IMG/VR virus record: IMGVR_UViG_3300029993_000005
Location: 1-64,000 of that record
Strand: one strand, 5' to 3'
DNA: 64,000 bases
The notes under the pieces are model-generated. The model was not told the DNA's origin and did no database searches. It saw nothing but the letters and a program-made list of their open reading frames with translations. The translations under genes were made by a program, and so were the position numbers. Below are positions 391-57,568 of this stretch, piece after piece (position 1 is the first letter of the stretch; each line of letters begins with the position of its first letter).

Positions 391-446
391 CAGTGCAGTG
401 ATTCCAGTATAATACAGATTGAAGCTGGTGCCAACAATTATTTTAA
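391..446 (-). promoter_or_regulatory. Class-A promoter cassette (TTGGCA-17-TATACT) with GCTGGTGCCAAC box
   Basis: -35 at 429-434, -10 at 406-411, conserved leader GGAATCACTGCACTGAAG. Confidence 0.8.
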
Positions 447-895
447 ATTACGCCAGCGTCCATTAGAGGTGGACGAGTCGCGAACACTCTGTGATTAAGA
501 TTAGGGTTCATCAGGCTCAACGTCACTTTTAACACTGGTCGCTGATCAGGGTACATTTCATCAATAAACAGAATGTGAGAAATGTGCATATTCGGAATGT
601 GATGCTTCAAGTCCAGCACGTTCATAAACAAAACTTTACGAGCGGTTAAGCGTTGTTCCTTCAGTGAATTCACAGTGAATCGCCACAAATTGTGCATAGC
701 CCTTGGTGCAACCACAATTATAGGTGACGACCGGTCAACCGGTACTTGACTCTCTAACGCGTCCAAGACAGCTAGGAAACGAGCCTCACGTTCGGGCGGT
801 GAACCCAGTTCGTGACCAGCGAATCGCGTGGTATTGTTAGCTAGTTTCTCGATTTCCTGGTCCGTGAGCTTTCGTGGATCTTTGTTTGAGTTCAT
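443..895 (-). CDS. hypothetical protein
   Basis: 150-aa ORF, start coupled to the stop of the upstream gene; stop lies in the cassette TTTAAAATAATT. Confidence 0.75.
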   Translation of the reverse strand: MNSNKDPRKLTDQEIEKLANNTTRFAGHELGSPPEREARFLAVLDALESQVPVDRSSPIIVVAPRAMHNLWRFTVNSLKEQRLTARKVLFMNVLDLKHHIPNMHISHILFIDEMYPDQRPVLKVTLSLMNPNLNHRVFATRPPLMDAGVI

Positions 896-1125
896 GCAGG
901 TTCCTCGTTTCCTTTGTGCTTGTGTTGTTGATTGCTTGCTCGTGTTCGGTGTTTGAGTTTAAGCCAAATCCTGAACATAGGATAACACAAGATCACTATT
1001 AAAGAGGCTTGACCCAAGCCATACATAAAGGCTAGAACTAAACTGAGCTTCGGGTACATTGGAGCACCGCAGATGCTGGCCGTCAAGAATAGAACAGACA
1101 GACAGTAAATTAGTTTGGACTTCAT
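892..1125 (-). CDS. small membrane protein
   Basis: Two hydrophobic stretches followed by a basic tail. Confidence 0.7.
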   Translation of the reverse strand: MKSKLIYCLSVLFLTASICGAPMYPKLSLVLAFMYGLGQASLIVILCYPMFRIWLKLKHRTRASNQQHKHKGNEEPA

Positions 1126-1128
1126 GGG

Positions 1129-1215
1129 TTATACCTCAATTGTAGTCAAGCAGTAAGCGTGGTATACATCGCGTTTTTTGCGCCCGGTCCCGAGGTAATA
1201 AGTTTGATGAATCAT
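1129..1215 (-). CDS. 28-aa peptide MIHQTYYLGTGRKKRDVYHAYCLTTIEV
   Basis: Manual translation; ATG directly behind the cassette RBS AAAGGGA and the promoter at 1250-1278. Confidence 0.55.
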   Translation of the reverse strand: MIHQTYYLGTGRKKRDVYHAYCLTTIEV

Positions 1216-1249
1216 GATTTTCCCTTTCGTTAGGACTTTCAATGAATTC

Positions 1250-1279
1250 AGTATAGTAAAGATTGAAGCTGGTGCCAAC
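1250..1279 (-). promoter_or_regulatory. Class-A promoter (TTGGCA-17-TATACT)
   Basis: -35 at 1273-1278, -10 at 1250-1255. Confidence 0.8.
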
Positions 1280-1336
1280 ATTTATATTTAAGTTTCGGTG
1301 AAGCTATCCAAAACAGCTTCCAAGTCTGCTAGGAGT

Positions 1337-1372
1337 ATTTGCTGTTTTCCAGCAATTTGCTGTTTTCCAGCA
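1337..1372. repeat. Perfect 18-bp tandem repeat x2; each unit contains TGCTG-N5-CAGCA
   Basis: atttgctgttttccagca at 1337-1354 and 1355-1372. Confidence 0.95.
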
Positions 1373-1378
1373 GTTCGA

Positions 1379-1513
1379 CTATAAATAGTGTCTAAGATGC
1401 GTCTCTAGAACTTGAGTAGCTTTAGCATTGGCATTCGTCGTGTAACAGAAATGCACGAAAGCCATGATCAACAAGAGGGCTATTACAAACCCAAGGGTTT
1501 CGTCTGGGGTCAT
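1379..1513 (-). CDS. 44-aa single-TM peptide MTPDETLGFVIALLLIMAFVHF...
   Basis: Manual translation; ATGA coupling with the 27-aa ORF. Confidence 0.6.
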   Translation of the reverse strand: MTPDETLGFVIALLLIMAFVHFCYTTNANAKATQVLETHLRHYL

Positions 1514-1593
1514 TTTGTCACCACTGCAGCAAGTGCCGATTGTAAATCAGCTATGAGCTTTCGGGCCGTTAGTGCAGAGAGCGTCTCAAGCAT
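1510..1593 (-). CDS. 27-aa peptide MLETLSALTARKLIADLQSALAAVVTK
   Basis: Manual translation; AAAAGGAG RBS upstream. Confidence 0.55.
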   Translation of the reverse strand: MLETLSALTARKLIADLQSALAAVVTK

Positions 1594-1614
1594 GCGAATC
1601 TCCTTTTGGTAGGG

Positions 1615-1655
1615 AAATGGGGATACCAACAGTGCAGTGAGTAGTATCCCCATTT
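1615..1655 (-). terminator. 12-bp stem-loop after nadV (possible terminator)
   Basis: aaatggggatac 1615-1626 / gtatccccattt 1644-1655, 17-nt loop. Confidence 0.5.
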
Positions 1656-1663
1656 ATTTACTA
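1655..1663 (-). promoter_or_regulatory. TAGTAAATA motif
   Basis: One of 9 intergenic copies, all upstream of minus-strand starts. Confidence 0.55.
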
Positions 1664-1682
1664 CGTGCTATAATAGGTGTGA

Positions 1683-3074
1683 TTACTTCAGATTGCTATT
1701 TGCCCGGACTTGCGCAAAGGTCTGGTCGTTGTACGATACACCATTCTCGTACACAACACGCAGAAGATTCTGACTCTCAGGACGCGAGCCTTTCGGGACA
1801 GCAATCATTTTGCCTGTAGCGTCATATACAACCATCTGACGACCCTTCAGCGACGCTTTCTCAGGTGCAGTAATCGGACTCTTGTTGATACCCGTCCAAT
1901 GTTCACCATCAGCGGAAATCGCTGAAGCCTTCTGCGCCCAACCTAAGTCATCCCGCATAACTTCTTGCAACAGCGCACCACCCATACCGTACCCGTTATT
2001 CTCGATTGAGAGCTTGTTAAGCTCCAAAGCGTGACAGATACCGTTAATGGATGTACGGTTTACGCCGTCACCCTGGATAATGCGTGCTGCAGGGTTCACC
2101 ACATCGTAACCCTTCTTATTGGTGTGGAAACCGTAAGAGTTAGCGATAGACTTAACCGCGTAAACAACTTCTGCGATAGGCTTACCTGAGTCAAGACGGA
2201 TGACGGCGGTACCACCTTTCGCCAAGACCTTATCCTTCAACTGCTTGCCCCAGATGTTATCTACTGAGTTACGTTGATCGTAAGCATCGCAAACACACGC
2301 GTACTTCTTGCCTTCGCCACCATACACATCAATCATGCGTTCGTAAGCTTGGGCTTCCCTTTCACGACCCCATGCGGTCACGGTGAAATGTTCCATGGCA
2401 GGAATTGAATACCCCGCCATCCATTCATCGTAGAACTCGGTTGCGGCCTCTAAGGCTGGGACAGTATCAGTGCCCATAAAGTTGATCAAATGCGACATAC
2501 CACCAAGCGCAGCTGATTCTTCAGAACTGGCACCGCGACCCCCAAAGTCATGCAAGCGAAATGCAAGCTCTTCCTCGGGATTATCGCACGTTTGCTCTAA
2601 CCACTTACGCAAGTCCTGTTTGATATGCCAGCTCAGTGTAGCGACCGAAGACTGATACCATGCAGCACGCAGAATCTCGGTCTCAAGAAACGAACCAAGA
2701 GTCGGCAATAACGGGTCCGTGCTTACTACCTGATAACACGGGACACCGACCGGAACAATCAACCCCTCGGGAAGAGCTTCAATGCGAACCGGAGGCAGTC
2801 CGTTATGGACCTCAACGATACGCTTGAACTCTTCGTATGGAAAGATGCCGCAGTGCTCGACAATACGACGGTTTGCGTACTCCACACTTTCCATTGTCAG
2901 CGGATTCTTCATCAGCTTCCGCTTCCAACTTTGGAGACCAAACCACAGTACCTGCTTGTACATGTTCAGACTACGAGCTGAACCATAGTTACTGGCGTAT
3001 TTCAAATCGTCGGGCAGCTGCGGTCCATGCGAATACTTGTAGCTGTCCGACCCTAAAGCAAATCCGTAAGTCAT
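1683..3074 (-). CDS. nadV: nicotinamide phosphoribosyltransferase (NAMPT)
   Basis: DSYKYSH, LHDFGGRG, GTDT, SIPAMEH, IRLDSG, IIQGDG and GMGGALLQ motifs. Confidence 0.95.
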   Translation of the reverse strand: MTYGFALGSDSYKYSHGPQLPDDLKYASNYGSARSLNMYKQVLWFGLQSWKRKLMKNPLTMESVEYANRRIVEHCGIFPYEEFKRIVEVHNGLPPVRIEALPEGLIVPVGVPCYQVVSTDPLLPTLGSFLETEILRAAWYQSSVATLSWHIKQDLRKWLEQTCDNPEEELAFRLHDFGGRGASSEESAALGGMSHLINFMGTDTVPALEAATEFYDEWMAGYSIPAMEHFTVTAWGREREAQAYERMIDVYGGEGKKYACVCDAYDQRNSVDNIWGKQLKDKVLAKGGTAVIRLDSGKPIAEVVYAVKSIANSYGFHTNKKGYDVVNPAARIIQGDGVNRTSINGICHALELNKLSIENNGYGMGGALLQEVMRDDLGWAQKASAISADGEHWTGINKSPITAPEKASLKGRQMVVYDATGKMIAVPKGSRPESQNLLRVVYENGVSYNDQTFAQVRANSNLK

Positions 3075-3075
3075 G

Positions 3076-3126
3076 GCAAATCTCCTTTGCAGTTTTTAAA
3101 GACCCAGGCTCTCTGCCTAGGGTTTG
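3076..3126 (-). promoter_or_regulatory. Twin-hairpin 5' leader of nadV
   Basis: Hairpin with AGAGA loop at 3103-3122, then GCAAA-GGAGA-TTTGC around the SD at 3076-3090; same design upstream of nadM. Confidence 0.6.
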
Positions 3127-3156
3127 GTCTAGTATAAACGACCGAACACGGAATTA

Positions 3157-4275
3157 TTAATCACACGGAATCAAGTTAATCATCTTATGGATGATCCAGA
3201 AGTGATCCGAGTATAGCTCATGCGCTTGAAGTAGCCCGAGCGGTACCCACTTGACCTCTTCGAAATCATCGTTTGCCTCTACGAGAGGTAAAGAAGTATT
3301 GTCGTTCAGTAGATACAGATACGCATGCGTGATGATGCGTCCCCGGTCATCTGACCGATTCGGATCAGAGAACACGTGCTTGAACCTGAATGACAGGTCC
3401 AACATTGAACGCGGTAACTTAATGCGTGTTTCCTCGTGAGATTCACGCAATGAACTGTCAGCTAACACTTCGTCATCGTGTGCAAATCCACCTGGTAGCG
3501 CCCACAGTCCTTTACCAGGATTCAATTTGCGTTTACCCAGCAGTACGTGTGATGACTGAATGAACACTGAATCAGTAGTCGTCATTATAGGACGATAGGG
3601 TTTGTTGCCCGCATACTGGTGCTCAATTTTGTACTGAGCAGCAAAGTCACGCTGATCGCGCAAACCATCTATAAACTCAACGTTACGTGGAATCCAAGTA
3701 TCAAGATACTCCGCCACGGGTTCAGGTACGTGCTGCCGTGAATAGTTCCACGTACCGGCCAGAATGGAATCGCGTAGATCCGTTGCATTTAGAGTCACAC
3801 CTAAGCCGGGCATACCCAACTGTTGTACCTTGTAACCATGCACGTTGACTGAACCCCACTGCGGGAATTTCTTCAGATAGTACGAGGTATGGTCCTTAGA
3901 GAAACCAATCAGTCCTATAGTCCTAGGTATAGGCCAATCATCATCTGCAAGTTTGTTCTGAACGTAAGCAACCTTCTTATGGACATCCATACACCAGTGG
4001 AAATCGTGGTCATGCATGTGATCGTCTAAGAACTGAACGATGATGCGACTGTCTCTGATTTCCTGCTTGTACGTGCGCCATAGCATCTCTTCGACTTCAA
4101 CTGCCGTCCAGGGATTCTTTCGGGTACGAGGGCGGTTGGCTGAACCCGTCAAGACCAGTACATGACGCGCTTTCTTTAATGCTTCATCAATAACATGCTT
4201 GTGGCCATTATGTAAGGGGCGAAATCGACCAATGAACACAAGCATATCGAATTCATACTCATAGATGTTTGACAT
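3157..4275 (-). CDS. nadM: bifunctional NMN adenylyltransferase / Nudix (ADP-ribose) hydrolase
   Basis: GRFRPLHNGH nucleotidyltransferase motif, NATDLR, Nudix box ALPGGFAHDDEVLADSSLRESHEET; start moved to ATG 4275 behind GGAG. Confidence 0.93.
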   Translation of the reverse strand: MSNIYEYEFDMLVFIGRFRPLHNGHKHVIDEALKKARHVLVLTGSANRPRTRKNPWTAVEVEEMLWRTYKQEIRDSRIIVQFLDDHMHDHDFHWCMDVHKKVAYVQNKLADDDWPIPRTIGLIGFSKDHTSYYLKKFPQWGSVNVHGYKVQQLGMPGLGVTLNATDLRDSILAGTWNYSRQHVPEPVAEYLDTWIPRNVEFIDGLRDQRDFAAQYKIEHQYAGNKPYRPIMTTTDSVFIQSSHVLLGKRKLNPGKGLWALPGGFAHDDEVLADSSLRESHEETRIKLPRSMLDLSFRFKHVFSDPNRSDDRGRIITHAYLYLLNDNTSLPLVEANDDFEEVKWVPLGLLQAHELYSDHFWIIHKMINLIPCD

Positions 4276-4276
4276 T

Positions 4277-4325
4277 TGCAAATCTCCTTTGCAGTTAATA
4301 AAAGAACACTCTCTGTGTTCAGTTT
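4277..4325 (-). promoter_or_regulatory. Twin-hairpin 5' leader of nadM
   Basis: GAACAC-AGAGA-GTGTTC at 4304-4320; TGCAAA-GGAGA-TTTGCA at 4277-4293. Confidence 0.6.
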
Positions 4326-4352
4326 GATTCAATTTGTATTTACTCCGCCGTT

Positions 4353-4670: not shown

Positions 4671-4678
4671 AGTAGTCC

Positions 4679-10892: not shown

Positions 10893-10936
10893 CAGTGCAG
10901 TGATTCCAGTATAGCACAATTTAAGATGGTGCCAAC
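10893..10936 (-). promoter_or_regulatory. Class-A promoter cassette (TTGGCA-16-TGnTATACT)
   Basis: -35 at 10930-10935, -10 at 10908-10913, extended -10, conserved leader. Confidence 0.75.
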
Positions 10937-12305: not shown

Positions 12306-12335
12306 AGTATAGACTAATTTGGTGCTGGTGCCAAC
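12306..12335 (-). promoter_or_regulatory. Class-A promoter (TTGGCA-17-TATACT)
   Basis: -35 at 12329-12334, -10 at 12306-12311. Confidence 0.75.
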
Positions 12336-12358: not shown

Positions 12359-12433
12359 TGGTCTGCCCTCTAGGAATCGAACCTAGACCCACAGCTTAGA
12401 AGGCTGTTGCTCTATCCGTTGAGCTAAGGGCAG
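12359..12433 (-). tRNA. tRNA-Arg (anticodon UCU), CCA encoded
   Basis: Full cloverleaf: CTGCCCT/AGGGCAG acceptor, GCTC/GAGC D stem, ACAGC-CTTCTAA-GCTGT, CTAGG-TTCGATT-CCTAG, A73-CCA. Confidence 0.97.
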
Positions 12434-12708: not shown

Positions 12709-12755
12709 AGTGATTCCAGTATAGTTTAGGTTGGTGCCAACGTCAACAATTATTT
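12709..12755 (-). promoter_or_regulatory. Class-B promoter cassette (TTGACG-17-TATACT, palindrome in the spacer), copy 1
   Basis: 47 bp identical to 54281-54327 and 57516-57562. Confidence 0.85.
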
Positions 12756-14996: not shown

Positions 14997-16514
14997 TTAT
15001 TTATTTGCCAATACTAGACCTTCTGCGACTAAGCCTTTGATAAGGGTCTCTAACTCGGGTTCAGAAAAATCGGTGTCTTTAATGGTGATCGACCGGTTAA
15101 CCAGACTATTTTGGGCTGGAGCCACAACTTTACCATAACCCAAGTTCCGTAACTCGTGAACCAGTTGGCGGCACTCGCTTAGGCTGAGGGGCAATCCTTT
15201 AATACGAACAGTTAGGTCCAACAATGGTACTTCTTGGACTAAGGATTCGTGGACCCTGACCTGGACCAAAGATTTAGAAGCTGGTGTTTGTAGACTTTGG
15301 CTAGTGTTGACGCTGGGCATTTCAAGTTTCTCCGGTGCAATTTGCATTACTTGTTTTTCAAGTTCTTGCTTGTCAATATTTTTGTATTTATAGTTGGCAT
15401 CCGTTGTTGTGTAGCTATGCGGATCAACTATTTCAGGCTTGAGTCTCCACATTAATCCCGCGACAGCACCTTTAGTCAGGCCCGCTGCAGGTTCAGTAAT
15501 GAACCAGCCCTTGGCTTTCATTGTTGACATCGTGTTCTGAATACGTAGGGCCTTCAAGTCGGGTCTAACTGCCTGAATTAATGCCGCGATGTCAGCTGAT
15601 TTATAAGGCTTCCTATCGGACATCGCTTTCCATATCAGGACAATCAAGGGATCATCTTTTGACATTGAAGCTGAGTGATCGACAAATTGCGAATTAGTGC
15701 TGGCGCTGCCTTCAACTGAAATTGATTCCTGTACTACTTGCTTCCAACCCAGAGTCATATCCAGATTATTTGTTGGCGCTTTATGCTTTGTTTCGTGGCC
15801 CTGACTCTGATTATAGGCATCAACCTCGACCTTAGTGGGTTGTGTCTGGTCAACTAAATTTTCAGTAGATTTCAGCAAGGACGGCATCGGGAAATCCTTT
15901 CTCAATGTATAAGAAGTACCACTCCCTTTATGTGACCGGCGTTCAAACCATCGATTGGTTCTAATCAGGGTGTCCAATCGTTTGTCAGTAATCCGGCTAT
16001 CGAACTTGTATTCAGCTAGAATTTTTCGAATTTCATAAGCGGTACGTGGCTTGTAATCAGACATCACTTTCCAGATACCGATGTCTAGTCCCTCCTCCGG
16101 ACGAATCACGCCTTTCGGGTCAGGGGCCAGTCTAACATTCGGTTCTCGGTGAACCCGTTTAGCCCTATGCGCGGTAATTGTCGTGTCCAAGATTTTCTTC
16201 TTTAGAGTAAATGTCAATATTCCGTTCGCGCCACGGACAGCCTCCAGTCTACCATCGGCTGCGTATTTAGCCATAATCGTTGGCACCAGATAACATTCTG
16301 GGTGATCCGGTAGCCTTAATTGTACGTCATGCACGGTCCATCCGCGATAATTGTACATTAATCCTAATACAGCATCATGGATATCCTGAACAGGTTCTGG
16401 TTTATTTTGTTCCTCCTCCAGCATAAGCCCGAAACCTAGTTCCGGCTCTGACTCTGGCTCAACAAACAATTCTGGCAACTGTGTCAGGTCGTTGACTTTG
16501 CGACTCTTAGTCAT
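14997..16514 (-). CDS. multi-winged-helix-like protein
   Basis: Internal repeats IWKVMSDYKPRTAYEI / IWKAMSDRKPYKSADI plus a third, weaker copy. Confidence 0.6.
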   Translation of the reverse strand: MTKSRKVNDLTQLPELFVEPESEPELGFGLMLEEEQNKPEPVQDIHDAVLGLMYNYRGWTVHDVQLRLPDHPECYLVPTIMAKYAADGRLEAVRGANGILTFTLKKKILDTTITAHRAKRVHREPNVRLAPDPKGVIRPEEGLDIGIWKVMSDYKPRTAYEIRKILAEYKFDSRITDKRLDTLIRTNRWFERRSHKGSGTSYTLRKDFPMPSLLKSTENLVDQTQPTKVEVDAYNQSQGHETKHKAPTNNLDMTLGWKQVVQESISVEGSASTNSQFVDHSASMSKDDPLIVLIWKAMSDRKPYKSADIAALIQAVRPDLKALRIQNTMSTMKAKGWFITEPAAGLTKGAVAGLMWRLKPEIVDPHSYTTTDANYKYKNIDKQELEKQVMQIAPEKLEMPSVNTSQSLQTPASKSLVQVRVHESLVQEVPLLDLTVRIKGLPLSLSECRQLVHELRNLGYGKVVAPAQNSLVNRSITIKDTDFSEPELETLIKGLVAEGLVLANK

Positions 16515-20087: not shown

Positions 20088-20117
20088 AGTATATACTAAA
20101 TTAGGGTTGGTGCCAAC
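20088..20117 (-). promoter_or_regulatory. Class-A promoter (TTGGCA-17-TATACT), perfect GTTGG-TG-CCAAC
   Basis: -35 at 20111-20116, -10 at 20088-20093. Confidence 0.8.
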
Positions 20118-20322: not shown

Positions 20323-21042
20323 TTAGCCTGCATATGCAATACGCAATCCTGTTGGGGTCTCTAGATTGTGCTCAGCATACCATTTTATAATTTGGTCGTA
20401 TAGACGGAGTGCGGAAGCCTCATTAGAAATCACGATGACCGTATTGTGTTCACAGACGTCCTCAGATTCAAACATGGGACCATCTGATTCCGAAAAATGA
20501 ATCAGATGTCGATAGGTAGGACCTTGGTCACTCCAGTCAGCAAGGGACACCGGGACCACGCTTCGAATCACAATGAAGAACTTGGTATCCAAATGTGCAT
20601 AATTTGGTACTCGTCTTGATACACCTTTCTTTGATGTATAAGCCCTGTCCTTGGAGTACTCGGCAACCACTTTAAACGTTGACGATTGGTCTTTATTCTT
20701 TGAGACCTCAACAATACCTGCTTTCTTCAACAAAGATAGTGAGGAACTGATTGAGGCAAACGTAGGACGCTTACCGTATTGTAAGGACTCTTGGTTCTTG
20801 ACTATGTAGAAGATCGTACATCCAGCCGGTTGGACCTTCACGAAATCGTAGACACACTCAATCAGAGGTTTTCCTTTGGCCTCGGATTTGAATCCAGAAT
20901 CAGTTTCATTTTCCGTTTCTTGAAATACAGAACTGAGCAACAAACGCATTGCTTTTTTAGCTGATTTATCAGTGCCCGTGCCCACGCTCGTGACGACTTG
21001 ATTTAACATTTGAGACTCCAGTTCACGTATTATGGACAACAC
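20323..21042 (-). CDS. winged-helix-containing hypothetical
   Basis: SISSSLSLLKKAGIVEVSK pattern; start uncertain. Confidence 0.6.
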   Translation of the reverse strand: MLSIIRELESQMLNQVVTSVGTGTDKSAKKAMRLLLSSVFQETENETDSGFKSEAKGKPLIECVYDFVKVQPAGCTIFYIVKNQESLQYGKRPTFASISSSLSLLKKAGIVEVSKNKDQSSTFKVVAEYSKDRAYTSKKGVSRRVPNYAHLDTKFFIVIRSVVPVSLADWSDQGPTYRHLIHFSESDGPMFESEDVCEHNTVIVISNEASALRLYDQIIKWYAEHNLETPTGLRIAYAG

Positions 21043-21916
21043 TGAGCTGCCTGTTAATGAGATTACGAAGGGTCTCTAGGCCACCCATAGTGCAGGTAAT
21101 CTTATCCAAAGACGATAACTTACCCTCAATGTTGGCCCACTTGGTTTTGTAGGTCCAGTCCATGAGTTCTACCGTTTTCTTTAATCGGTTAAATCCAATA
21201 TTACCGTCAAGAAAATGTAGGTCCAGCACATTAGCATATTGGTGCCTAAACAATTCTTGTTGAGAGGGCAGCAAACCTATGACACATACTTTAGGTAATC
21301 GAGTACGAGATACAGGGTCCTCAAAGTCGGTCCTTGGTTCTTCTGGTACGTCTGGTGCCAACACTCCGGGTAGTCGACGATTCAGCACGTCATTAACTTC
21401 CGATCTGATGAGGGTCCTCAGTTGTTCCGGACTAGAAAGGTCTTTGATGCGGACCGTTACTTCTGCCAATAGTTCGTCTAGGCTAAAAGTTTCCATACAG
21501 TGTGCAGCACTACATTGAGATTGAGAGTGGGTGTGGGCTTGAGCCAAGGCCTGTCTTTCGACTTCAGGAACAACCATTGGTTTGATTGCCTGATATTTCT
21601 CACTAGGGGCTGCGTCTACTCTTGCTGCAGATACAGGCAGCAAAGCCGACTCGGGATTGTCAGGATCCAGATGAAATGTAGATAAGCCTTGATTCTCGGC
21701 TGCTAGACCAGCATCAAAGATTTTCCACAGAGGCATCAACCAAGACATGTAGCTTTGCGACTGGCGGATGTCTCGGTGCCTAGAGCTTACGATTTGCTCT
21801 TCCATAGAGTCTCTAACGATTCGCGTCAAATTCCGGGCTGGGTGAATTTGACGCGTTAGCCAAGCGGCCAGAGCAATCTTGTGCTTCTCTTCCTTCGTCC
21901 ATATGATGTGTGCCAT
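21023..21916 (-). CDS. hypothetical protein
   Basis: 297-aa ORF; C-terminal KVCVIGLLPSQ alpha/beta domain. Confidence 0.75.
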   Translation of the reverse strand: MAHIIWTKEEKHKIALAAWLTRQIHPARNLTRIVRDSMEEQIVSSRHRDIRQSQSYMSWLMPLWKIFDAGLAAENQGLSTFHLDPDNPESALLPVSAARVDAAPSEKYQAIKPMVVPEVERQALAQAHTHSQSQCSAAHCMETFSLDELLAEVTVRIKDLSSPEQLRTLIRSEVNDVLNRRLPGVLAPDVPEEPRTDFEDPVSRTRLPKVCVIGLLPSQQELFRHQYANVLDLHFLDGNIGFNRLKKTVELMDWTYKTKWANIEGKLSSLDKITCTMGGLETLRNLINRQLSVVHNT

Positions 21917-25601: not shown

Positions 25602-25602
25602 G

Positions 25603-36182: not shown

Positions 36183-36201
36183 TTTATTTTCCGCACACCA
36201 G

Positions 36202-36708: not shown

Positions 36709-36798
36709 TCCTTTGACTGGGACTTAGCCACTAACTATTTGACTCTATCCTATACTAAGACTTTTCCACTAGCAAGACTTTAATGTTGGCCCCAACAG

Positions 36799-47362: not shown

Positions 47363-47845
47363 TTACCGGGCTTGAATTTCTGCTCCTGCCTGGTCCAATA
47401 ATTGAAACAACCCGTCACGACACTTTAAAGCTCTTCCTTGCGAGTCAGTGGTACTCTTACGATCAACTGATCTATAATAATCAAATAATAAATCAAGATC
47501 AGCACCAACAGGGATCCTTTCGCGTAATTGCACATGGAAGATCTCACGTTCGCCTGCGGGCAGAGCTTCGAACATGGTGTCGTTTAACTCCACAAACCAA
47601 ATAGGCCATCCAGCGCTCTCAGCCACGATTTCATGTAAAAAATCTATATTAGTGTGAAAATTGGGTTTGAGCTCATATGCCATGCATCCAACGCTACAAC
47701 CCTTGAACTTTTGTCCCTTGATTGCAGGGAGAATACCGTAGGTGCCGGACATAAGCATATCCAGCTCGTAGTGCTTCTTGGCTAGATTGACGTGCAGTTC
47801 TTTGACTTTGGGATCGTTGTGATAAGACAGAATCTTGTTGGACAT
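47363..47845 (-). CDS. Family-P paralogue 2
   Basis: ILSYHNDPKVK, HYELD.L.SGTYG, GCSVGC, GWP.W, IPVGADL. Confidence 0.85.
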   Translation of the reverse strand: MSNKILSYHNDPKVKELHVNLAKKHYELDMLMSGTYGILPAIKGQKFKGCSVGCMAYELKPNFHTNIDFLHEIVAESAGWPIWFVELNDTMFEALPAGEREIFHVQLRERIPVGADLDLLFDYYRSVDRKSTTDSQGRALKCRDGLFQLLDQAGAEIQAR

Positions 47846-52429: not shown

Positions 52430-52459
52430 ACTATAATTTATATTGCAGCTGGTGCCAAC
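52430..52459 (-). promoter_or_regulatory. Class-A promoter (TTGGCA-17-TATAGT)
   Basis: -35 at 52453-52458, -10 at 52430-52435. Confidence 0.75.
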
Positions 52460-53137: not shown

Positions 53138-53287
53138 ACCCGGAAGTTTTAGAATCTCTTTTTCCAGGATAAGTATAACTATAGCTTTTTAGTTTGAGAA
53201 TTCAGTGCTAATAGCTCATTGTATAAATCGAGATTGGTTTTCACAATTTCTCCTTTTCGTTAGGTAGTTTAGTTGGTGCCTAGGAAT

Positions 53288-53470: not shown

Positions 53471-53509
53471 GGTAACTCCTAATTAGGATCGTATAAATTC
53501 AAATAGACA

Positions 53510-54247
53510 TTAAATTTCTACAGGCATGGGCACAGGCACGGACGCAGCAGATAGCAAGTTTAGAAGTGTGTCGCGCTCCCAGAGCCAATGAGCTTCAGCT
53601 GAATCTGCTGCTGAGTATGCTGAATCTATTGCTGAGTATGCTGAATCTGATAATGACCAGTAGGCTGACCGTGCTGCTGACTCTGCTGACCAGGATGCTG
53701 ACTCTGCTGACCAGGATGCTGACCAGTAGGCTGACCGTGCTGACTCTGCTGCTGACTCTGCTGCTGACTTTGCTGCTTCTTTAGCCCTCAGTCTTTGTTC
53801 AGGATTAGCTAAATTTGCAATTTCGGCCTCAAAATAAGCCACGCATTGTTCAATTGCGCTAACACAAACGATGGCATACTCGGCGGGGTTCAAACGCAAA
53901 GGGACAAGTGTATGTTCTGCCCTAGCCTTTGCTAACTGCCATTTAACTTTAGAAACGTCGGCGCCTACGGGTATTACAGTCAAAAAGTCTACCGCAAATT
54001 GTTGAGCATCAATGGGAGAAAGATTCTCAAAAATAGTGTCCTCAAGTCGCGCCAGCCACACGGGTAGACCAAGTTCGATTGGATACTGATCGTGATCGTA
54101 GCTCTCCAAGGTACAGCCAACAGCGCATCCATGTTTAGCTTCAGGGTCCCAGCCTACACGCTGCATGATATTGTCTGCTTCATGATGAGCTTTAAGACGC
54201 GCTACGTATTTAGCTTTAATTGCAGGGTCGCCGTGAAATGCTTTCAT
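53510..54247 (-). CDS. Family-P paralogue 4 with Ser/Ala/Trp repeat tail
   Basis: AFHGDPAIKA, GCAVGC, LGLPVWLARL, IPVGADVS, SAYWSASWSAESASWSAE, HWLWERDTLL; start moved to ATG 54247. Confidence 0.9.
   Translation of the reverse strand: MKAFHGDPAIKAKYVARLKAHHEADNIMQRVGWDPEAKHGCAVGCTLESYDHDQYPIELGLPVWLARLEDTIFENLSPIDAQQFAVDFLTVIPVGADVSKVKWQLAKARAEHTLVPLRLNPAEYAIVCVSAIEQCVAYFEAEIANLANPEQRLRAKEAAKSAAESAAESARSAYWSASWSAESASWSAESAARSAYWSLSDSAYSAIDSAYSAADSAEAHWLWERDTLLNLLSAASVPVPMPVEI
53680..53741. repeat. 62-bp exact repeat (copy 2 at 55384-55445)
   Basis: Encodes the SAYWSASWSAESASWSAE block in paralogues 4 and 5. Confidence 0.9.
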
Positions 54248-54277
54248 GATCTTGTTCCTTTTCGTTGGGTTGTTTGA

Positions 54278-54333
54278 TTCAGTGATTCCAGTATAGTTTA
54301 GGTTGGTGCCAACGTCAACAATTATTTTAAATA
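54278..54333 (-). promoter_or_regulatory. Class-B promoter cassette, copy 2
   Basis: 56 bp identical to 57513-57568; TTGACG 54313-54318, TATACT 54290-54295. Confidence 0.9.
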
Positions 54334-54893
54334 GTCTCGTCAATCTGAGATTCGGCATCAAGCAACAAGCGTGTGAGAACCTGGGTCTTGTTCAATTTCC
54401 AAGTCTTGGCTAGGGCCTCCAAAATTTTTGAGGTTTCGGGACTAAGTGTACTACCGGGCAGGCGCTTGCCTCCAGCTTCTTTCAGTGATGTATAAGCATT
54501 GGTCTTACGAACTCGCTGTTTTGGTTCGGTCTTGGGTTCAATCACGGAGTCATCACTGGTCAGGAGTCTCGCCAAATAGGCGGTCTTTGCATATTGATAC
54601 TCATAGGCGGTCTTTGCATATTGATACTCGGTGAACATAAGTTCAGAGACTTCTTGAGCATACTCAGCAGTACGCAGACTTGCTGAGAAAGTACTCCAAT
54701 TAGGGGCCTCCGGGTAAACCGAGCTATACAGAGAAGTGCTTTTGTCAGCCACAGCTGCTTCAACCAAGCTGAGCATGTCGGCCTGAACTAAATCTGCCTT
54801 GAGTGTTATTTTGTCAAAGAAATCATGACCATCAGCATACGTCGCGGTCAAAATTTCCACCAGTGAGGCAGCGCTATAATATTGTGTGTTCAT
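54327..54893 (-). CDS. protein with C-terminal RHH-like domain; contains a 27-bp tandem duplication
   Basis: SLKEAGGKRLPGSTLSPETSKILEAL resembles the neighbouring gene; EYQYAKTAY x2. Confidence 0.75.
   Translation of the reverse strand: MNTQYYSAASLVEILTATYADGHDFFDKITLKADLVQADMLSLVEAAVADKSTSLYSSVYPEAPNWSTFSASLRTAEYAQEVSELMFTEYQYAKTAYEYQYAKTAYLARLLTSDDSVIEPKTEPKQRVRKTNAYTSLKEAGGKRLPGSTLSPETSKILEALAKTWKLNKTQVLTRLLLDAESQIDETI
54576..54629. repeat. perfect in-frame 27-bp tandem duplication
   Basis: ataggcggtctttgcatattgatactc x2. Confidence 0.95.
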
Positions 54894-54937
54894 TATCTTT
54901 CCTTAATTACGATTTATTTTGTTTTATTACCTACGTT

Positions 54938-55192
54938 TTACTTCGAGCTGGCACCAATACGCTTAGCCTGACGAATCAACGATTCTTCGATAGCCGAACG
55001 CTTGGTCCCATAGTGTTCGGTCAATGTAGCTAAGGCTGCGCTAGCCTCAGCGTTGATGCGGACGGTTCCTAGTCGCTGTCCACCATCTGCAAACAGTGAA
55101 TTCTCCATGGCTTGTACGCGCTCGTTAGCCGTCATGGCTGTGCCTGTGAAAGGACGACCGCGCTTGACTACTATGTTTTTAATTTTTTTCAT
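54938..55192 (-). CDS. AT-hook plus RHH-like small DNA-binding protein
   Basis: KRGRPFTG.AMTANER; SLFADGGQRLGTVRINAEASAAL. Confidence 0.7.
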   Translation of the reverse strand: MKKIKNIVVKRGRPFTGTAMTANERVQAMENSLFADGGQRLGTVRINAEASAALATLTEHYGTKRSAIEESLIRQAKRIGASSK

Positions 55193-55241
55193 TTTGCATG
55201 CTCCAGTTGTTTATTGATCGTTGGTGCCGTGCCTTGCCCTA

Positions 55242-55269
55242 ATTATAGCACAGAGGATTTAGGCTTCAA
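55242..55269 (-). promoter_or_regulatory. sigma70-like promoter TTGAAG-16-TGnTATAAT; half-box GTTGGTGCC in the leader (55220-55228)
   Basis: -10 at 55242-55247 with TG extension. Confidence 0.55.
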
Positions 55270-56008
55270 TCAACAGCTTCAGTAAGGTATCGCGCTCCCA
55301 GAGCCAATGAGATTCAGCTGAATTGGCTGACAGTGCTAACTCTGCTGATGACCATACTGCTGACCAGTAGGCTGAAAGTGCTAACTCTGCTGACCAGGAT
55401 GCTGACTCTGCTGACCAGGATGCTGACCAGTAGGCTGACCGTGCTAAATCTGCTAAACGTGCTGACTCTGCTGAATCCGCTGCTGAATCTGCTGCTTTTT
55501 CAGCTTCTTTACGCTGGTCCTCCGTAGCTGTTCCCTCAACCTTAGCTTTGCAATAGTTGATTACCAGATGGAGGGCTTGGTAGCATTTAACAGCGTAGTC
55601 CTCTTTGTTATATTTTAATGCTTCCAGCTGCCGTTCGTGACGAGCAACTGCTAGCTTCCATTGGACGGGTTCCAAATCCTTCCCTATGGGGATTGCTTCC
55701 CTCAAATCTACATGGAATTTAGCTCTAAGGTCTGCGGGCAATCCCTCAAACATTGACTCACTCAAGTATGCTAGCCACAAGGGCCATCCGGCATGATCAG
55801 CTACTGTCTTGTGCTTGTCCTCACTATCTGGGTCAATATCGTGCGCCATACAACCAATACTACAGGCTACAAATACTTCGTGGTCGTCACGCTTCTCTAA
55901 GTTACCGTATGTACCGGAACGAAGAATATCAAGTTCGTAATGTCTACGGGCCTGAGCTACATGGTAGTCTTTTACTGCTTGATCGTTGTGATAAGAAAGT
56001 ACGGTCAT
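55259..56008 (-). CDS. Family-P paralogue 5 with Ser/Ala/Trp repeat tail
   Basis: N-terminus like paralogue 2, middle nearly identical in DNA to paralogue 1, tail identical in part to paralogue 4. Confidence 0.9.
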   Translation of the reverse strand: MTVLSYHNDQAVKDYHVAQARRHYELDILRSGTYGNLEKRDDHEVFVACSIGCMAHDIDPDSEDKHKTVADHAGWPLWLAYLSESMFEGLPADLRAKFHVDLREAIPIGKDLEPVQWKLAVARHERQLEALKYNKEDYAVKCYQALHLVINYCKAKVEGTATEDQRKEAEKAADSAADSAESARLADLARSAYWSASWSAESASWSAELALSAYWSAVWSSAELALSANSAESHWLWERDTLLKLLIEA

Positions 56009-56033
56009 TTTAAGTTCCTTAGTGGTTTAAATT

Positions 56034-56090
56034 TAGTGCAGTGATTCCAGTATAGCTCAACTTAACGATGGTGCCAACAATTATTTTAAA
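56034..56090 (-). promoter_or_regulatory. Class-A promoter cassette (TTGGCA-17-TATACT)
   Basis: -35 at 56072-56077, -10 at 56049-56054, conserved leader. Confidence 0.8.
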
Positions 56091-56332
56091 TAGTCTTGAG
56101 CTTTTACCATCAGGGTCTCGAATTCTGAGGCAGTTAATCCAGTATTCATGCCACAACCACCGTCGCAGGTATCCAGGAATTCGGAAATCTCTAGAACGTA
56201 GGGGTCAGTGCCGTAGACAATCAAACAGTGGTCAATGATGCGTTGACGAGCTACGAACGCATCATTGTTGGATTCAGCCAAAATTCTTAAAGCTGAATTC
56301 AGGTTAGCCTTTGAAAGTTTGGTCTTCATCAA
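56081..56332 (-). CDS. hypothetical protein
   Basis: Ends YLK* inside the cassette. Confidence 0.7.
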   Translation of the reverse strand: MMKTKLSKANLNSALRILAESNNDAFVARQRIIDHCLIVYGTDPYVLEISEFLDTCDGGCGMNTGLTASEFETLMVKAQDYLK

Positions 56333-56545
56333 TTAGTCCATAGGTGGGTCAAAGGAACGAGCCTCTATGCACAGTGTATGGGCTTCGCTTAATGCCTTTT
56401 GCCCCAGTTCAAAGCCATTACCGTTGCGGTCATTTCCGTGATGCATCAAAGCCGTACCTATAAGCTTCTGCAATTCAGTGATAACCCTTAACAGGTCCTT
56501 ACGTGTGGGCTTACGTGTGGGCGCGGGCTTGGACTTGGTCCTCAT
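56333..56545 (-). CDS. hypothetical protein
   Basis: 70-aa coupled ORF. Confidence 0.7.
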   Translation of the reverse strand: MRTKSKPAPTRKPTRKDLLRVITELQKLIGTALMHHGNDRNGNGFELGQKALSEAHTLCIEARSFDPPMD

Positions 56546-56991
56546 AACTCATTCTCCGGTTGCCAATCATGACCGCACTTAACACAACGCTTGTACGCTG
56601 CGGTGCCACATCTCAGACTGTAACTGGTTCCTGCGCGGCCTCGACCCTCAGCACAGACCGGACATTTCGGCCAGTGACTAGGTTGATACACAACGTCATC
56701 TTTAATGTCTAAGTCCAAAAGTACCAAAGTTGTAACAAGTTCTTGGATAACCTCATGGGCTACCAAATGATTTACAAAATCGGTCAACAGTACCGCGCAG
56801 TGGTTTAATCCCGAACTCTTCTTAGACTCAAATAATTGGGTTCTGTAGTGTTTAGCCAGATCATCAAAGTCTAGGCCTACAGGACCTAGATAAGGGCCCA
56901 GTTCGTAATAATCGTCAGACGGGCCTTCGCCAAACATATAAAGAGTCATACCCTCGGGAATCAAAGTTGACGCGATGTTTGAGACGTTCAT
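56542..56991 (-). CDS. hypothetical with C-terminal Zn ribbon
   Basis: CPVC...CVKCGHDW; AGGAG RBS. Confidence 0.75.
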   Translation of the reverse strand: MNVSNIASTLIPEGMTLYMFGEGPSDDYYELGPYLGPVGLDFDDLAKHYRTQLFESKKSSGLNHCAVLLTDFVNHLVAHEVIQELVTTLVLLDLDIKDDVVYQPSHWPKCPVCAEGRGRAGTSYSLRCGTAAYKRCVKCGHDWQPENEL

Positions 56992-57028
56992 TTTTTGAAA
57001 CTCCTAAATTAAATAGGCTTAAACATCG

Positions 57029-57040
57029 GTTGGTGCCAAC
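57029..57040. promoter_or_regulatory. perfect GTTGG-TG-CCAAC box without a matching -10
   Basis: Intergenic, upstream of 56991. Confidence 0.55.
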
Positions 57041-57049
57041 TTTTTACGG

Positions 57050-57289
57050 CTAATCTTTAACTATACTTTTGTGGGTCAGATGAATTTTACGCTTAACGCA
57101 TGTCGGGCAATAGTCCAAGGTTCCAACGGAATACCAACCTCTGGTCTTAAGATCAGTCCTAAATTGAGCCTTAGTTGTATTTGGGCTATTCGTGTTATCC
57201 ACTCGGTGAGGATCGTCACAGCCCTCGCAGGAAATTTGAAGCCAGACCTCAATCCTGATTTGACTCAGGAACAAAGTATGAGCCGTCAA
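57050..57289 (-). CDS. small CxxC...CxxC protein
   Basis: CEGC...YCPTC. Confidence 0.65.
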   Translation of the reverse strand: MTAHTLFLSQIRIEVWLQISCEGCDDPHRVDNTNSPNTTKAQFRTDLKTRGWYSVGTLDYCPTCVKRKIHLTHKSIVKD

Positions 57290-57482
57290 TGCAGATAGCG
57301 CCGCTAGCCAGATGCACTTCGTATATACCGTTGTGGTAATGCCTCAAAACAGTAACTGAGAACCCACTATAGGTTCCACGTTGACCTGGAAAAAGTACAA
57401 CAGGTTCAAGACCACGCTGGTCCATGCTCGCTACCCAATCAGCATCGGTTCTGTGTGTCTTGGCAAATTCTGCTGCTTTCAT
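57249..57482 (-). CDS. hypothetical protein
   Basis: Start moved to ATG 57482 behind the cassette RBS. Confidence 0.7.
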   Translation of the reverse strand: MKAAEFAKTHRTDADWVASMDQRGLEPVVLFPGQRGTYSGFSVTVLRHYHNGIYEVHLASGAICIDGSYFVPESNQD

Positions 57483-57512
57483 TTTGCTCTTCCTTTTCGC
57501 TAGGTTGTGCGC

Positions 57513-57568
57513 TTCAGTGATTCCAGTATAGTTTAGGTTGGTGCCAACGTCAACAATTATTTTAAATA
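57513..57568 (-). promoter_or_regulatory. Class-B promoter cassette, copy 3
   Basis: TTGACG 57548-57553, TATACT 57525-57530. Confidence 0.9.

What the first reader, a model, noticed from the sequence alone, without database searches (positions are those of the whole stretch)
424..57548. A regulon marked by a 12-bp near-palindrome (GTTGG-NN-CCAAC) that shifts register within sigma70-like promoters
Seen: TGGTGCCAAC occurs at 426, 1270, 10927, 12326, 12732, 20108, 52450, 54304, 56069, 57031 and 57539. All are intergenic and co-oriented; I found only one more copy, inside a CDS at 21353. Five have perfect 5-bp arms, and a GTTGG-CC-CCAAC variant sits at 36785. In seven (class A) the box supplies the -35 (TTGGCA, 16-17 nt before TATACT or TATAGT). 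In three (class B) it lies 6 nt further downstream, in the spacer behind a separate TTGACG -35, and at 57029 it stands alone. Inference: because the box persists when it is not the -35, it is probably an operator for a dimeric phage protein controlling many small accessory (early) genes.
Basis: partly seen in the sequence, partly recalled or inferred. Interest (0 to 1): 0.72.

Follow-up and report, generated by a model that had tools for sequence, protein, structure and literature searches.

The report
Phage early promoters sharing a dyad box
An uncultured 230-kb peat phage drives many small genes of unknown function from 14 near-consensus bacterial-type promoters that share an invariant short palindrome over or just after the -35 element; the palindrome probably binds a protein, but none was found.

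Summary
TGGTGCCAAC occurs 13 times in the window against 0.18 expected.

On the gene strand the box reads GTTGGCACCA-N-C. The whole 230-kb phage has 14 promoter copies, 11 of them in the window. All lie between 0 and 71 kb, on both sides of a divergent switch near 65 kb.

Each copy sits in a roughly 100-bp expression cassette:
- an A/T-rich upstream tract,
- a -35 element, a 16-18 nt spacer, and TATACT or TATAGT,
- a conserved leader and ribosome-binding site.

In nine cassettes the box supplies the -35 (TTGGCA). In three near-identical cassettes it lies 6 nt downstream of a separate TTGACG.

Five invariant positions lie outside the -35 hexamer. Four of them mirror the left arm, and the box replaces the consensus A of the -35 with G. 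This favours a second protein reading the dyad.

No regulator, diverged relative or RNA data could be found, so the operator reading is plausible but unproven. The nearest precedent is the PeSL promoter cassette of T4-like phages. There too an inverted repeat shifts position within the promoter, although this dyad does not fold.

The parts
406..435 (-). Class A promoter core. Box 424-435 (GTTGGCACCAGC), -35 TTGGCA 429-434, 17-nt spacer, -10 TATACT 406-411. Predicted start near 399. Drives the gene starting at 353, a member of the paralogous family of unknown function.
1250..1279 (-). Class A promoter core. Box 1268-1279, -35 TTGGCA, 17-nt spacer, -10 TATACT 1250-1255. Followed by a 28-aa ORF from 1215, then gene 892-1125.
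10908..10936 (-). Class A promoter core. Box 10925-10936 (GTTGGCACCATC), 16-nt spacer, -10 TATACT 10908-10913. Gene start 10860.
12306..12335 (-). Class A promoter core. Box 12324-12335, 17-nt spacer, -10 TATACT 12306-12311. Gene start 12250. Lies directly downstream of tRNA-Arg(TCT) 12359-12433.
12718..12746 (-). Class B promoter core. -35 TTGACG 12741-12746, perfect box 12730-12741 in the spacer, -10 TATACT 12718-12723. Gene start 12670.
20088..20117 (-). Class A promoter core with a perfect dyad, box 20106-20117. 17-nt spacer, -10 TATACT 20088-20093. Gene start 20012.
52430..52459 (-). Class A promoter core. Box 52448-52459, 17-nt spacer, -10 TATAGT 52430-52435. Gene start 52395.
54290..54318 (-). 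Class B promoter core. -35 TTGACG 54313-54318, perfect box 54302-54313, -10 TATACT 54290-54295. Gene start 54247 (paralogous family).
56049..56078 (-). Class A promoter core. Box 56067-56078 (GTTGGCACCATC), 17-nt spacer, -10 TATACT 56049-56054. Gene start 56008 (paralogous family).
57010..57040 (-). Perfect box 57029-57040 with only a weak candidate -10, TATTTA, 18 nt after TTGGCA (57010-57015). The gene starts at 56991, which would leave a leader of about 12 nt. Promoter status uncertain.
57525..57553 (-). Class B promoter core. -35 TTGACG 57548-57553, perfect box 57537-57548, -10 TATACT 57525-57530. Gene start 57482.
53272..53283 (-). Decayed class B remnant, CTAGGCACCAAC. The left arm and -35 are mutated, and about 25 nt including most of the -10 and leader are deleted. 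The ribosome-binding module is retained.
36785..36796 (.). GTTGG-CC-CCAAC variant next to a G/C hairpin downstream of gene 36840-38408. No -10 or A/T tract. Probably a chance match or part of a terminator, not a family member.
21353..21362 (-). Copy of the 10-mer inside CDS 21023-21916 (sense). No -10 at 16-18 nt, and position 12 is not C.
16279..16288 (+). Copy of the 10-mer inside CDS 14997-16514 (antisense to the gene). No -10.

Best explanation
**What the sites are.** They are strong early promoters of an RNA-polymerase-less jumbo phage distantly related to Ralstonia phage phiRSL1. The host sigma70-type holoenzyme reads them. Each lies in a portable cassette of about 100 bp: an A/T-rich UP-like tract, a -35, a 16-18 nt spacer, TATACT, a GGAAT discriminator, a conserved leader, an AACGAAAAGGAA ribosome-binding module and a start codon. 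The cassettes sit in front of small genes of unknown function.

**What the box is.** A 12-bp dyad, GTTGG-CA-CCA-N-C, is superimposed on the core promoter. It spans about -36 to -25 in class A and about -30 to -19 in class B. It is most likely read by a second, sequence-specific protein. Because it always overlaps the polymerase footprint but tolerates two registers, that protein is more likely a repressor than an activator. The repressor would switch this promoter class off together, for example at the early-to-middle transition. It is probably phage-encoded, and less likely a host factor.

**Shown:** the promoter anatomy, the invariance of the box, the dyad and the two registers.

**Inferred:** that a protein binds, that it represses, and that the phage encodes it.
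For: **Promoter anatomy**
- A generic search for TTG[AGT]C[AGT], 16-18 nt, TA[TC]ANT over the whole phage gave 17 hits. Twelve are this family, and every one carries the box.
- All copies are co-oriented with a downstream ribosome-binding site and start codon.

**Conservation beyond the -35**
- In the nine class A promoters that this box-independent search retrieved, the G before the hexamer, the CCA after it and C12 never vary.
- Position 11, positions 13-15 and the rest of the spacer vary freely. Flank identity between most copies is 20-45%, close to random.
- By spacer sequence there are about ten separate lineages.

**Dyad symmetry**
- Of the five invariant positions outside the hexamer, four pairings (1 with 12, 8 with 5, 9 with 4, 10 with 3) are exactly complementary.
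- The chance of this is about 1 in 256, a post-hoc figure from the sequence itself.
- The box puts G where the sigma70 consensus has A (TTGGCA), and that G is mirrored by C8. When the -35 is separate, in class B, it reads TTGACG with the consensus A.

**Two registers.** Class B keeps a perfect 12/12 dyad where it cannot act as a -35, only 11 nt before the -10.

**Alternatives that failed**
- The dyad is not an RNA or DNA hairpin. Eleven modules fold no better than shuffles, with z from -0.74 to +1.11.
- There is no sigma54 -12 element.
- A promoter-dead remnant at 53283 has lost the left arm, so unselected copies do decay.

**A separate late promoter class.** Another motif, CTAGTAAATA, marks other operons, including those in the 173-185 kb region I take to hold virion genes. 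phiRSL1 shares it. This fits a distinct later promoter class.
Against: **No binding protein found**
- Whole-phage six-frame searches for HTH_3, Sigma70_r4, HTH_17, RHH_1, HTH_31, HU, AsiA and MotCF were all negative.
- Pfam scans of 61 window proteins found no DNA-binding domain.

**No independent data**
- No RNA run was listed.
- No diverged relative carries the box in IMG/VR, JGI metagenomes or GenBank phages. Every hit with promoter context was the same phage at 99.8-100% identity.
- phiRSL1 has no such regulon.

**Features that fit poorly**
- Fourteen of 14 identical 10-mers is tighter than known operator sets, and looks more like a repeat family.
- Some copies are identical over 46-60 nt (56078 and 71148; the class B trio). 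Duplication or gene conversion is therefore ongoing, and class B counts as one event.
- The half-site centres are only 7 bp apart, which is unusual for helix-turn-helix dimers.
- Position 11 breaks the symmetry in 8 of 14 copies.
Confidence: 0.45

Rival explanations
1. The box is only the extended -35 of a recently amplified, recombining promoter cassette, analogous to a PeSL. It is kept invariant by selection for maximal promoter strength, by unknown polymerase or DNA-shape preferences, and by duplication or gene conversion. Its palindromy is incidental. Class B arose from a class A copy by a 6-bp insertion that created TTGACG and a compensating 6-bp deletion in the spacer, carrying the old -35 along as a passenger.
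For: - PeSL cassettes of RB49 and phi1 combine the same parts: a sigma70-consensus promoter, an A/T tract and a ribosome-binding site across about 100 bp in ORFan-rich regions. Their inverted repeat falls into five position classes relative to the -35 and -10 (PMC2839356).
- Copies here are identical over 46-60 nt, and paralogous genes follow several of them.
- The distance from the AATAATTG tract to the -10 is the same in both classes. Class B aligns to the 20117 copy with two 6-bp indels.
- Zero variation across 14 copies is typical of repeats.
- No regulator was found.
Against: - The spacer and flanks next to the box have randomised, while five positions outside the hexamer have not.
- Known sigma70 holoenzyme contacts do not read -29 to -25. 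This rests on established knowledge, not on a test here.
- Four pairings of the extra positions complete a dyad, at about 1 in 256 by chance.
- The -35 departs from the consensus exactly where the dyad requires it, and returns to the consensus A in class B.
- The modules do not fold, so the defining PeSL stem-loop is absent.
Confidence: 0.33
2. The box is a positive-control element. It would be the binding site of a phage activator, sigma-appropriation factor or phage sigma that recruits polymerase, in the manner of the T4 MotA box centred near -30.
For: - In class A the box spans -36 to -25, much like a MotA box.
- Two boxes (57040 and 65353) have only weak -10 elements and might need help.
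Against: - The promoters already have a near-consensus -35, -10 and UP-like tract, and should fire unaided.
- The 6-bp register shift in class B would move an activator by about 200 degrees around the helix.
- There are no AsiA, MotA or Sigma70_r4 homologues.
- The one weak Sigma70_r2 hit, E 0.013 in a 325-aa ORF, was not confirmed by Pfam or PDB.
Confidence: 0.08
3. The dyad is a target for recombination or DNA modification: a crossover site for cassette shuffling, or a methylase or restriction-type recognition site. It would not be a transcription operator.
For: - Compact 12-bp dyads with an asymmetric 2-bp centre are more typical of enzymes acting on DNA than of helix-turn-helix repressors.
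- Logan contigs from low-coverage runs join one promoter module to another (54280 to 56035, and 54284 to 57516).
- A DNA methyltransferase gene in two pieces lies at 70040-70837 of the record, between box promoters.
- The PeSL authors speculated that their repeat has a recombination role.
Against: - The joints are at repeats longer than the assembler's word size, and may be assembly forks.
- All other assemblies of the phage are collinear.
- GGCACC and GGTGCC are over-represented about 1.7-fold, not avoided, whereas true avoided palindromes such as CGTACG and GGCGCC are nearly absent.
- The 5-bp arms are far shorter than known recombinase half-sites.
Confidence: 0.07

Closest known systems
PeSL (promoter-early stem-loop) cassettes of T4-like phages RB49, phi1, T4/PST and KVP40/nt-1 (PMC2839356, PMC4122927)
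   Same: - A repeated cassette of about 100 bp: an A/T-rich tract, a near-consensus sigma70 -35 and -10, a ribosome-binding site and a start codon.
- Located in front of small ORFans in plastic early regions.
- An inverted repeat whose position relative to the -35 and -10 differs between subclasses.
- Copies long and similar enough to recombine.
   Different: - PeSL repeats are stable G/C stem-loops that terminate upstream transcription.
- Here the dyad has 5-bp arms and a 2-bp centre, and the modules fold no better than shuffles.
- This phage is not T4-like.
- A PeSL-type element carrying the same TTGGCACCA core inside a GGGG...CCCC stem turned up by chance in a T4-like cyanophage contig and in Synechococcus phage ACG-2014f.
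Repressor operators overlapping early promoters in phages (lambda and P22 Cro/CI at OR and OL; phi29 p4/p6 at A2b and A2c)
   Same: - A dyad-symmetric site overlapping the -35 or spacer of sigma70-type early promoters.
- Several copies that would be switched together.
   Different: - Those operators are 17 bp or longer, with half-site centres about 10 bp apart. They vary between copies and have a known cognate protein.
- Here the site is 12 bp with a 7-bp half-site spacing, the core is invariant and no protein is known.
- This comparison rests on my own knowledge of those systems and was not tested here.
T4 early and middle promoters (phage-specific extended consensus; MotA box at -30)
   Same: - A phage promoter family with conserved positions outside the two hexamers.
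- A box around -30.
   Different: - There are no AsiA or MotA homologues.
- A good -35 is present.
- The box occurs in two registers.
Sigma54 promoters (-24 TGGCAC, -12 TTGC)
   Same: The box contains TGGCAC exactly.
   Different: No -12 element: zero matches to TGGCAC-N5-TTGCW even with one mismatch. A sigma70-type -10 lies at the correct spacing instead.

Membership tests
Sigma70-type (-35/-10) bacterial promoter | A -35 hexamer close to TTGACA and a -10 close to TATAAT (A at position 2, T at position 6), separated by 16-18 nt | tested here: met
   TTGGCA or TTGACG (5 of 6), spacer 16-18 nt, and TATACT or TATAGT (5 of 6) in 12 copies. Two copies have only TATTTA or TATTTT.
Sigma70-type (-35/-10) bacterial promoter | Intergenic, co-oriented with a downstream gene, often with an A/T-rich UP tract | tested here: met
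   All copies lie upstream of a ribosome-binding site and start codon 12-69 nt after the predicted start. The exception is 65353, where no nearby ribosome-binding site and ORF follows. An A/T tract lies immediately 5' of the -35, strongest in the last five bases before the box.
Sigma70-type (-35/-10) bacterial promoter | Transcripts start about 7 nt after the -10 | not testable with these tools
   No RNA run was listed for this DNA. Only DNA runs from peat metagenomes hold it.
PeSL cassette | Strong sigma70-like promoter with an A/T tract and ribosome-binding site, repeated in ORFan-rich regions | tested here: met
   Repeat families D3, D4, D5 and D7 of 38-95 nt. The downstream genes have no Pfam or PHROG function.
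PeSL cassette | A stable stem-loop that can terminate upstream transcription | tested here: not met
   Eleven modules folded as RNA gave z from -0.74 to +1.11 against shuffles, with no conserved hairpin.
PeSL cassette | Recombination between copies (indels, mini-circles) | tested here: inconclusive
   Contig joints between modules appear in low-coverage runs, but they are at repeats longer than the assembler's word. The other assemblies are collinear.
Dyad operator of a dimeric repressor | Dyad symmetry of the conserved positions | tested here: met
   Positions 1/12, 3/10, 4/9 and 5/8 are complementary and invariant in 14 of 14 copies. The 2/11 pair is complementary in 6 of 14.
Dyad operator of a dimeric repressor | Overlap with the polymerase footprint at several co-regulated promoters | tested here: met
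   The box spans -36 to -25 (class A) or -30 to -19 (class B) at 14 promoters.
Dyad operator of a dimeric repressor | A cognate DNA-binding protein | tested here: not met
   No recognisable DNA-binding domain in whole-phage six-frame searches or in 61 window proteins. A novel fold is not excluded.
Dyad operator of a dimeric repressor | Site conserved in diverged relatives along with the regulator | not testable with these tools
   No relative closer than about 60% amino-acid identity exists in the collections searched.
Sigma54 promoter | -12 TTGC element 5 nt after the -24 TGGCAC | tested here: not met
   Zero matches with up to one mismatch, against 2.95 expected by chance.
MotA/AsiA-type sigma appropriation | AsiA and MotA homologues, and a box replacing a missing -35 | tested here: not met
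   No AsiA or MotCF match. A near-consensus -35 is present.

The most novel reading that the evidence does not exclude
The 12-bp dyad is the operator of a phage protein with no recognisable DNA-binding fold. That protein would switch off, all at once, every host-sigma70 early promoter of a lytic jumbo phage that has no RNA polymerase of its own. This would be a global early shut-off by direct promoter occlusion, rather than by modifying or inhibiting host polymerase. The compact 7-bp half-site spacing would point to an unusual mode of DNA recognition.
Probability: 0.3. Interest if true: 0.6.

Novelty: new variant of a known kind. Interest (0 to 1): 0.42.

Why it matters
Little is known about how jumbo phages without their own RNA polymerase time their gene expression. 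This phage offers a clean, self-contained case.

- It has 14 near-identical strong promoters with a candidate switch element built into them.
- A distinct second promoter motif, AGTAAATA, is shared with phiRSL1 and resembles the T4 late promoter TATAAATA.

If the dyad is an operator, its binding protein would be a new early shut-off factor. The promoter and operator pair could also serve as a compact regulatory part.

If the dyad is not an operator, the family extends PeSL-like mobile promoter cassettes beyond T4-like phages. It would also show that a register-shifting inverted repeat is a recurring feature of such cassettes.

The value is limited because the phage is uncultured, its host is unknown and no relatives are available.

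Tried and rejected
**Sigma54 promoter.** TGGCAC lies inside the box, but there is no -12 element. Rejected.

**Terminator or hairpin.** The modules fold no better than shuffles. The only terminator-like call is a G-T-paired stem on the antisense strand of class B. Rejected.

**Restriction or methylation site** (the box centre fits GGYRCC and GGNNCC). GGCACC and GGTGCC are over-represented, not avoided. Not supported.

**Comparative genomics**
- IMG/VR pattern scan: only identical copies of the same phage plus chance CDS hits.
- Topoisomerase-based locus search: self only.
- Homologues of the promoter-proximal ORFan and of Thg1: nearest non-self relatives 47-63% identical, in unrelated or distant phages without the box.
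- GenBank phages: nothing.

**phiRSL1.** No box regulon and no repeated sigma70 promoter family. Its XRE-like ORF016 and DNA-binding ORF064 have no homologue here.

**Population variation from reads.** The low-share runs hold the same strain at low coverage. The differences reported come from paralogous copies, and none lies in a box.

**RNA evidence.** No run was listed.

**Regulator hunt**
- Family searches and Pfam scans were negative (calls cited above).
- A crude helix-turn-helix pattern picked out protein 35688-36251. The Atlas shows a DUF4160-like fold with only weak (TM 0.29-0.39) resemblance to GerE or HTH_23 at the C-terminus. This is a lead, not a candidate.
- The weak Sigma70_r2 hit at 114867 of the record was not confirmed.

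**Relatives search for a virus record.** The record behind L097 is not held.

Full report
**Context**

The window is the first 64 kb of a 230,110-bp virus record (97% complete by CheckV), assembled from peat metagenomes.
- Its type II topoisomerase is 59% identical to that of Ralstonia jumbo phage phiRSL1. No GenBank phage matches at the DNA level.
- Genes run on the - strand from 1 to about 64.8 kb, and on the + strand from about 65.4 to 149 kb.
- G+C content is about 46%.

**Checking the observation**

TGGTGCCAAC occurs 13 times in the window against 0.18 expected. GTTGG-NN-CCAAC occurs 6 times against 0.08 expected. One copy in the opposite orientation, inside a CDS at 16279, was missed.

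Read on the gene strand, the box is GTTGGCACCA-N-C. The whole phage holds 22 copies of the 10-mer.
- Fourteen lie in promoter cassettes.
  - On the - strand: 435, 1279, 10936, 12335, 12741, 20117, 52459, 54313, 56078, 57040, 57548.
  - On the + strand, just beyond the window: 65353, 70842, 71148.
- Eight lie inside CDS.

The promoters therefore flank the divergent switch at about 65 kb and point away from it.

**Anatomy**

I searched the whole phage for a loose sigma70 pattern: TTG[AGT]C[AGT], 16-18 nt, TA[TC]ANT. This pattern does not specify the non-hexamer box positions.
- It gave 17 hits. Twelve belong to this family and every one carries the box.
- The other five lie in CDS or lack the A/T tract, leader and other family features.

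The three arrangements are as follows.
- **Class A (nine copies).** TTGGCA, 16-18 nt, then TATACT or TATAGT.
- **Class B (three copies).** TTGACG, 17 nt, TATACT. The box begins at the last base of the -35, so TTGGCA sits only 11 nt from the -10.
- **Two further boxes (57040 and 65353).** Only TATTTA or TATTTT follows at 18 nt. At 57040 the leader would be about 12 nt, so its promoter status is doubtful.

Around the core, each copy has:
- an A/T-rich tract of the TTTAAAATAATTG type,
- a GGAAT discriminator,
- a probable start at the A of ATCACTG,
- a conserved leader,
- an AACGAAAAGGAA ribosome-binding module.

Repeat families of 38-95 nt confirm this cassette.

**The downstream genes**

The first genes downstream have no Pfam family. 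Only one has a PHROG match, and that family has no known function.
- Five belong to one paralogous family: 3-353, 47363-47845, 53510-54247, 55259-56008, and 72312-73166 of the record.
- That family is widespread in phages and resembles Imm5-like immunity proteins only at the fold level.

**Is the box more than a -35?**

Sites found through the exact 10-mer are invariant by construction. I therefore rely on the nine class A promoters that the box-independent pattern retrieved.

| Positions | Behaviour |
|---|---|
| G before the hexamer; CCA after it (about -29 to -27); C12 (about -25) | Invariant |
| Position 11 | A, G or T |
| Positions 13-15 and the rest of the spacer | Differ freely |

- Flank identity between most pairs is 20-45%.
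- By spacer sequence there are about ten lineages.
- Neighbouring unconstrained positions have therefore had time to randomise.
- A promoter-dead class B remnant at 53283 has lost its left arm.
- No degenerate family members exist. The only 1-2-mismatch intergenic matches lack a promoter context.

Known sigma70 holoenzyme contacts do not read -29 to -25. This is established knowledge, not something tested here.

The extra invariant positions pair 1 with 12, 8 with 5, 9 with 4, and 10 with 3. All four pairings are complementary, which would happen by chance about once in 256. That figure is post hoc.

The box also forces G at hexamer position 4 (TTGGCA). The free-standing -35 of class B has the consensus A (TTGACG).

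Together these points favour a second reader of the dyad.

**Why this remains unproven**

- *Class B is one evolutionary event.* Its three copies are identical over 46 nt, although their leaders differ. Class B also aligns to the 20117 copy by a 6-bp insertion before the box and a 6-bp deletion in the spacer. The first step would be nearly neutral. A passenger origin for the displaced box is therefore possible.
- *The core is unusually uniform.* Fourteen identical cores is tighter than known operator sets. Some copies (56078 and 71148) are identical over about 60 nt, so duplication or conversion is ongoing.
- *The geometry is atypical.* Half-site centres are 7 bp apart, which is unusual for helix-turn-helix dimers. 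Position 11 breaks the symmetry in 8 of 14 copies.
- *No binding protein was found.*
  - Six-frame searches of the whole phage for HTH_3, Sigma70_r4, HTH_17, RHH_1, HTH_31, HU, AsiA and MotCF were negative.
  - Pfam scans of 61 window proteins found only metabolic and RNA-repair domains: NAMPT, an NMN-adenylyltransferase/Nudix fusion, RtcB, Thg1 and a phosphoesterase.
  - A weak Sigma70_r2 hit was not confirmed.
- *No RNA run was listed*.
- *The DNA runs with partial coverage hold the same strain* and gave no informative variation.
- *No relative is close enough to test conservation*.
- *phiRSL1 has neither the box regulon nor any repeated sigma70-type promoter family*.

**Alternatives examined**

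- *Sigma54.* The box contains TGGCAC, but no -12 element follows.
- *Hairpin or terminator.* Eleven modules fold no better than shuffles.
- *Restriction or methylation site.* GGCACC is over-represented, while other palindromes are strongly avoided.
- *Activator or sigma appropriation.* The promoters are already near consensus. The 6-bp shift would turn an activator to another face of the helix. AsiA and MotA are absent.

**Comparison with known systems**

The closest described system is the PeSL cassette of T4-like phages (PMC2839356, PMC4122927).
- PeSLs are strong sigma70 promoters with an A/T tract, a ribosome-binding site and an inverted repeat, spread through ORFan-rich regions.
- Five subclasses differ in where the repeat sits relative to the -35 and -10.
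- This is a direct precedent for the register shift that needs no operator.

The defining PeSL stem-loop is not met here, so this is a look-alike and not a member.

By chance, the metagenome scan recovered a T4-like cyanophage contig with two copies of a GGGG...CCCC stem wrapped round the same TTGGCACCA core, 17 nt before TATACT. Synechococcus phage ACG-2014f has a similar element. TTGGCA embedded in a dyad is therefore a recurrent solution.

**Verdict**

- That these are early, host-polymerase promoters forming one co-regulated class: confidence about 0.9.
- That the dyad is a protein-binding operator, most likely for shut-off: about 0.45.
- That it is only an extended promoter or cassette feature: about 0.33.
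- The remainder is split between activation and a DNA-enzyme target.

This is a new variant of known kinds (phage early promoter cassettes; operators overlapping a -35). It is of moderate interest, and its testability is limited because the phage is uncultured.

Noticed in passing
window 29511, 44405, 45054, 47302, 59593, 63620, 64933 (- strand; first base of the motif); also 34250 (CTCGTAAATA); genome-wide about 18 copies: A second intergenic motif, CTAGTAAATA, is co-oriented with genes. It also occurs in the 173-185 kb and 222-227 kb regions. phiRSL1 has 14 copies of gcAGTAAATA[AG], and a related 144-kb metagenome phage (L095) has three. It resembles the T4 late promoter TATAAATA, so it is probably a lineage-conserved middle or late promoter for an unrecognised phage sigma factor.
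   Followed up: partly
G000 16279, 21362, 75155, 90701, 179104, 188208, 196972, 224349: Outside the promoter cassettes, the 10-mer GTTGGCACCA occurs 8 times, in both orientations. Expectation is 0.5-2.5, and its 30 one-substitution neighbours average 1.27. All eight lie inside called CDS, although 196972 directly follows a ribosome-binding site and ATG on the opposite strand, so that gene call is uncertain. None has a -10, and only 2 of 8 keep C12. Unexplained.
   Followed up: partly
window 12359-12433 (-): tRNA-Arg (anticodon TCT) lies directly upstream of the box promoter at 12335.
   Followed up: yes
window 3-353, 47363-47845, 53510-54247, 55259-56008; G000 72312-73166: A five-member paralogous family of unknown function. 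It is widespread in phages and has homologues in Xanthomonadales genomes; its fold resembles Imm5-like immunity proteins. Three members sit directly behind box promoters. Two carry variable tandem repeats of 9-21 nt (53597-53784 and 55316-55494).
   Followed up: partly
window 55242-55269, about 9760, about 22000 (- strand): Candidate extended -10 promoters (TGCTATAAT, TGGTATAAT, TGCTATTAT) without a box. The first two also lack a -35. This may be a third promoter type that would stay active if -35 recognition were blocked.
   Followed up: no
whole record: Strong avoidance of some 6-bp palindromes: CGTACG 1 against 52 expected, GGCGCC 1 against 20, and also CCGCGG, CGATCG, CTCGAG. This suggests pressure from host restriction systems.
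   Followed up: no
G000 70040-70534 and 70604-70837 (+): A DNA methyltransferase appears split into two ORFs. One carries a DLPY motif and the other an SGTTG motif. It lies between the box promoters at 65353 and 70842, and ThyX lies just upstream (69342-70037).
   Followed up: no
window 1683-4332, 34334-35557, 59615-60466: NAD-salvage genes (NAMPT and an NMN-adenylyltransferase/Nudix fusion) and tRNA-repair genes (RtcB, Thg1-like), as in other phiRSL1-like jumbo phages.
   Followed up: partly
window 54280 to 56035 and 54284 to 57516: Contigs from low-coverage peat runs join one promoter module to another, skipping 1.75 and 3.2 kb. These are either assembly forks at repeats over 31 nt long, or rare cassette deletions.
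   Followed up: no
L140 28-57 and 357-386; L218 (Synechococcus phage ACG-2014f 49295-49340): T4-like cyanophages carry a GGGG...CCCC stem wrapped round TTGGCACCA, 17 nt before TATACT or TATAAT. This is a PeSL-type element with the same core as the box.
   Followed up: partly
L097 19677 and 20360: A 254-kb metagenome jumbo phage whose Thg1 is 56% identical has two promoters of the form TTGAC(A/G), 16 nt, TAGAAT. They share an identical TTCTGTGCA block directly after the -35. This is another case of conserved sequence just 3' of the -35. Only two copies were visible.
   Followed up: no
window 54576-54629: A perfect 27-nt tandem duplication inside gene 54327-54893.
   Followed up: no
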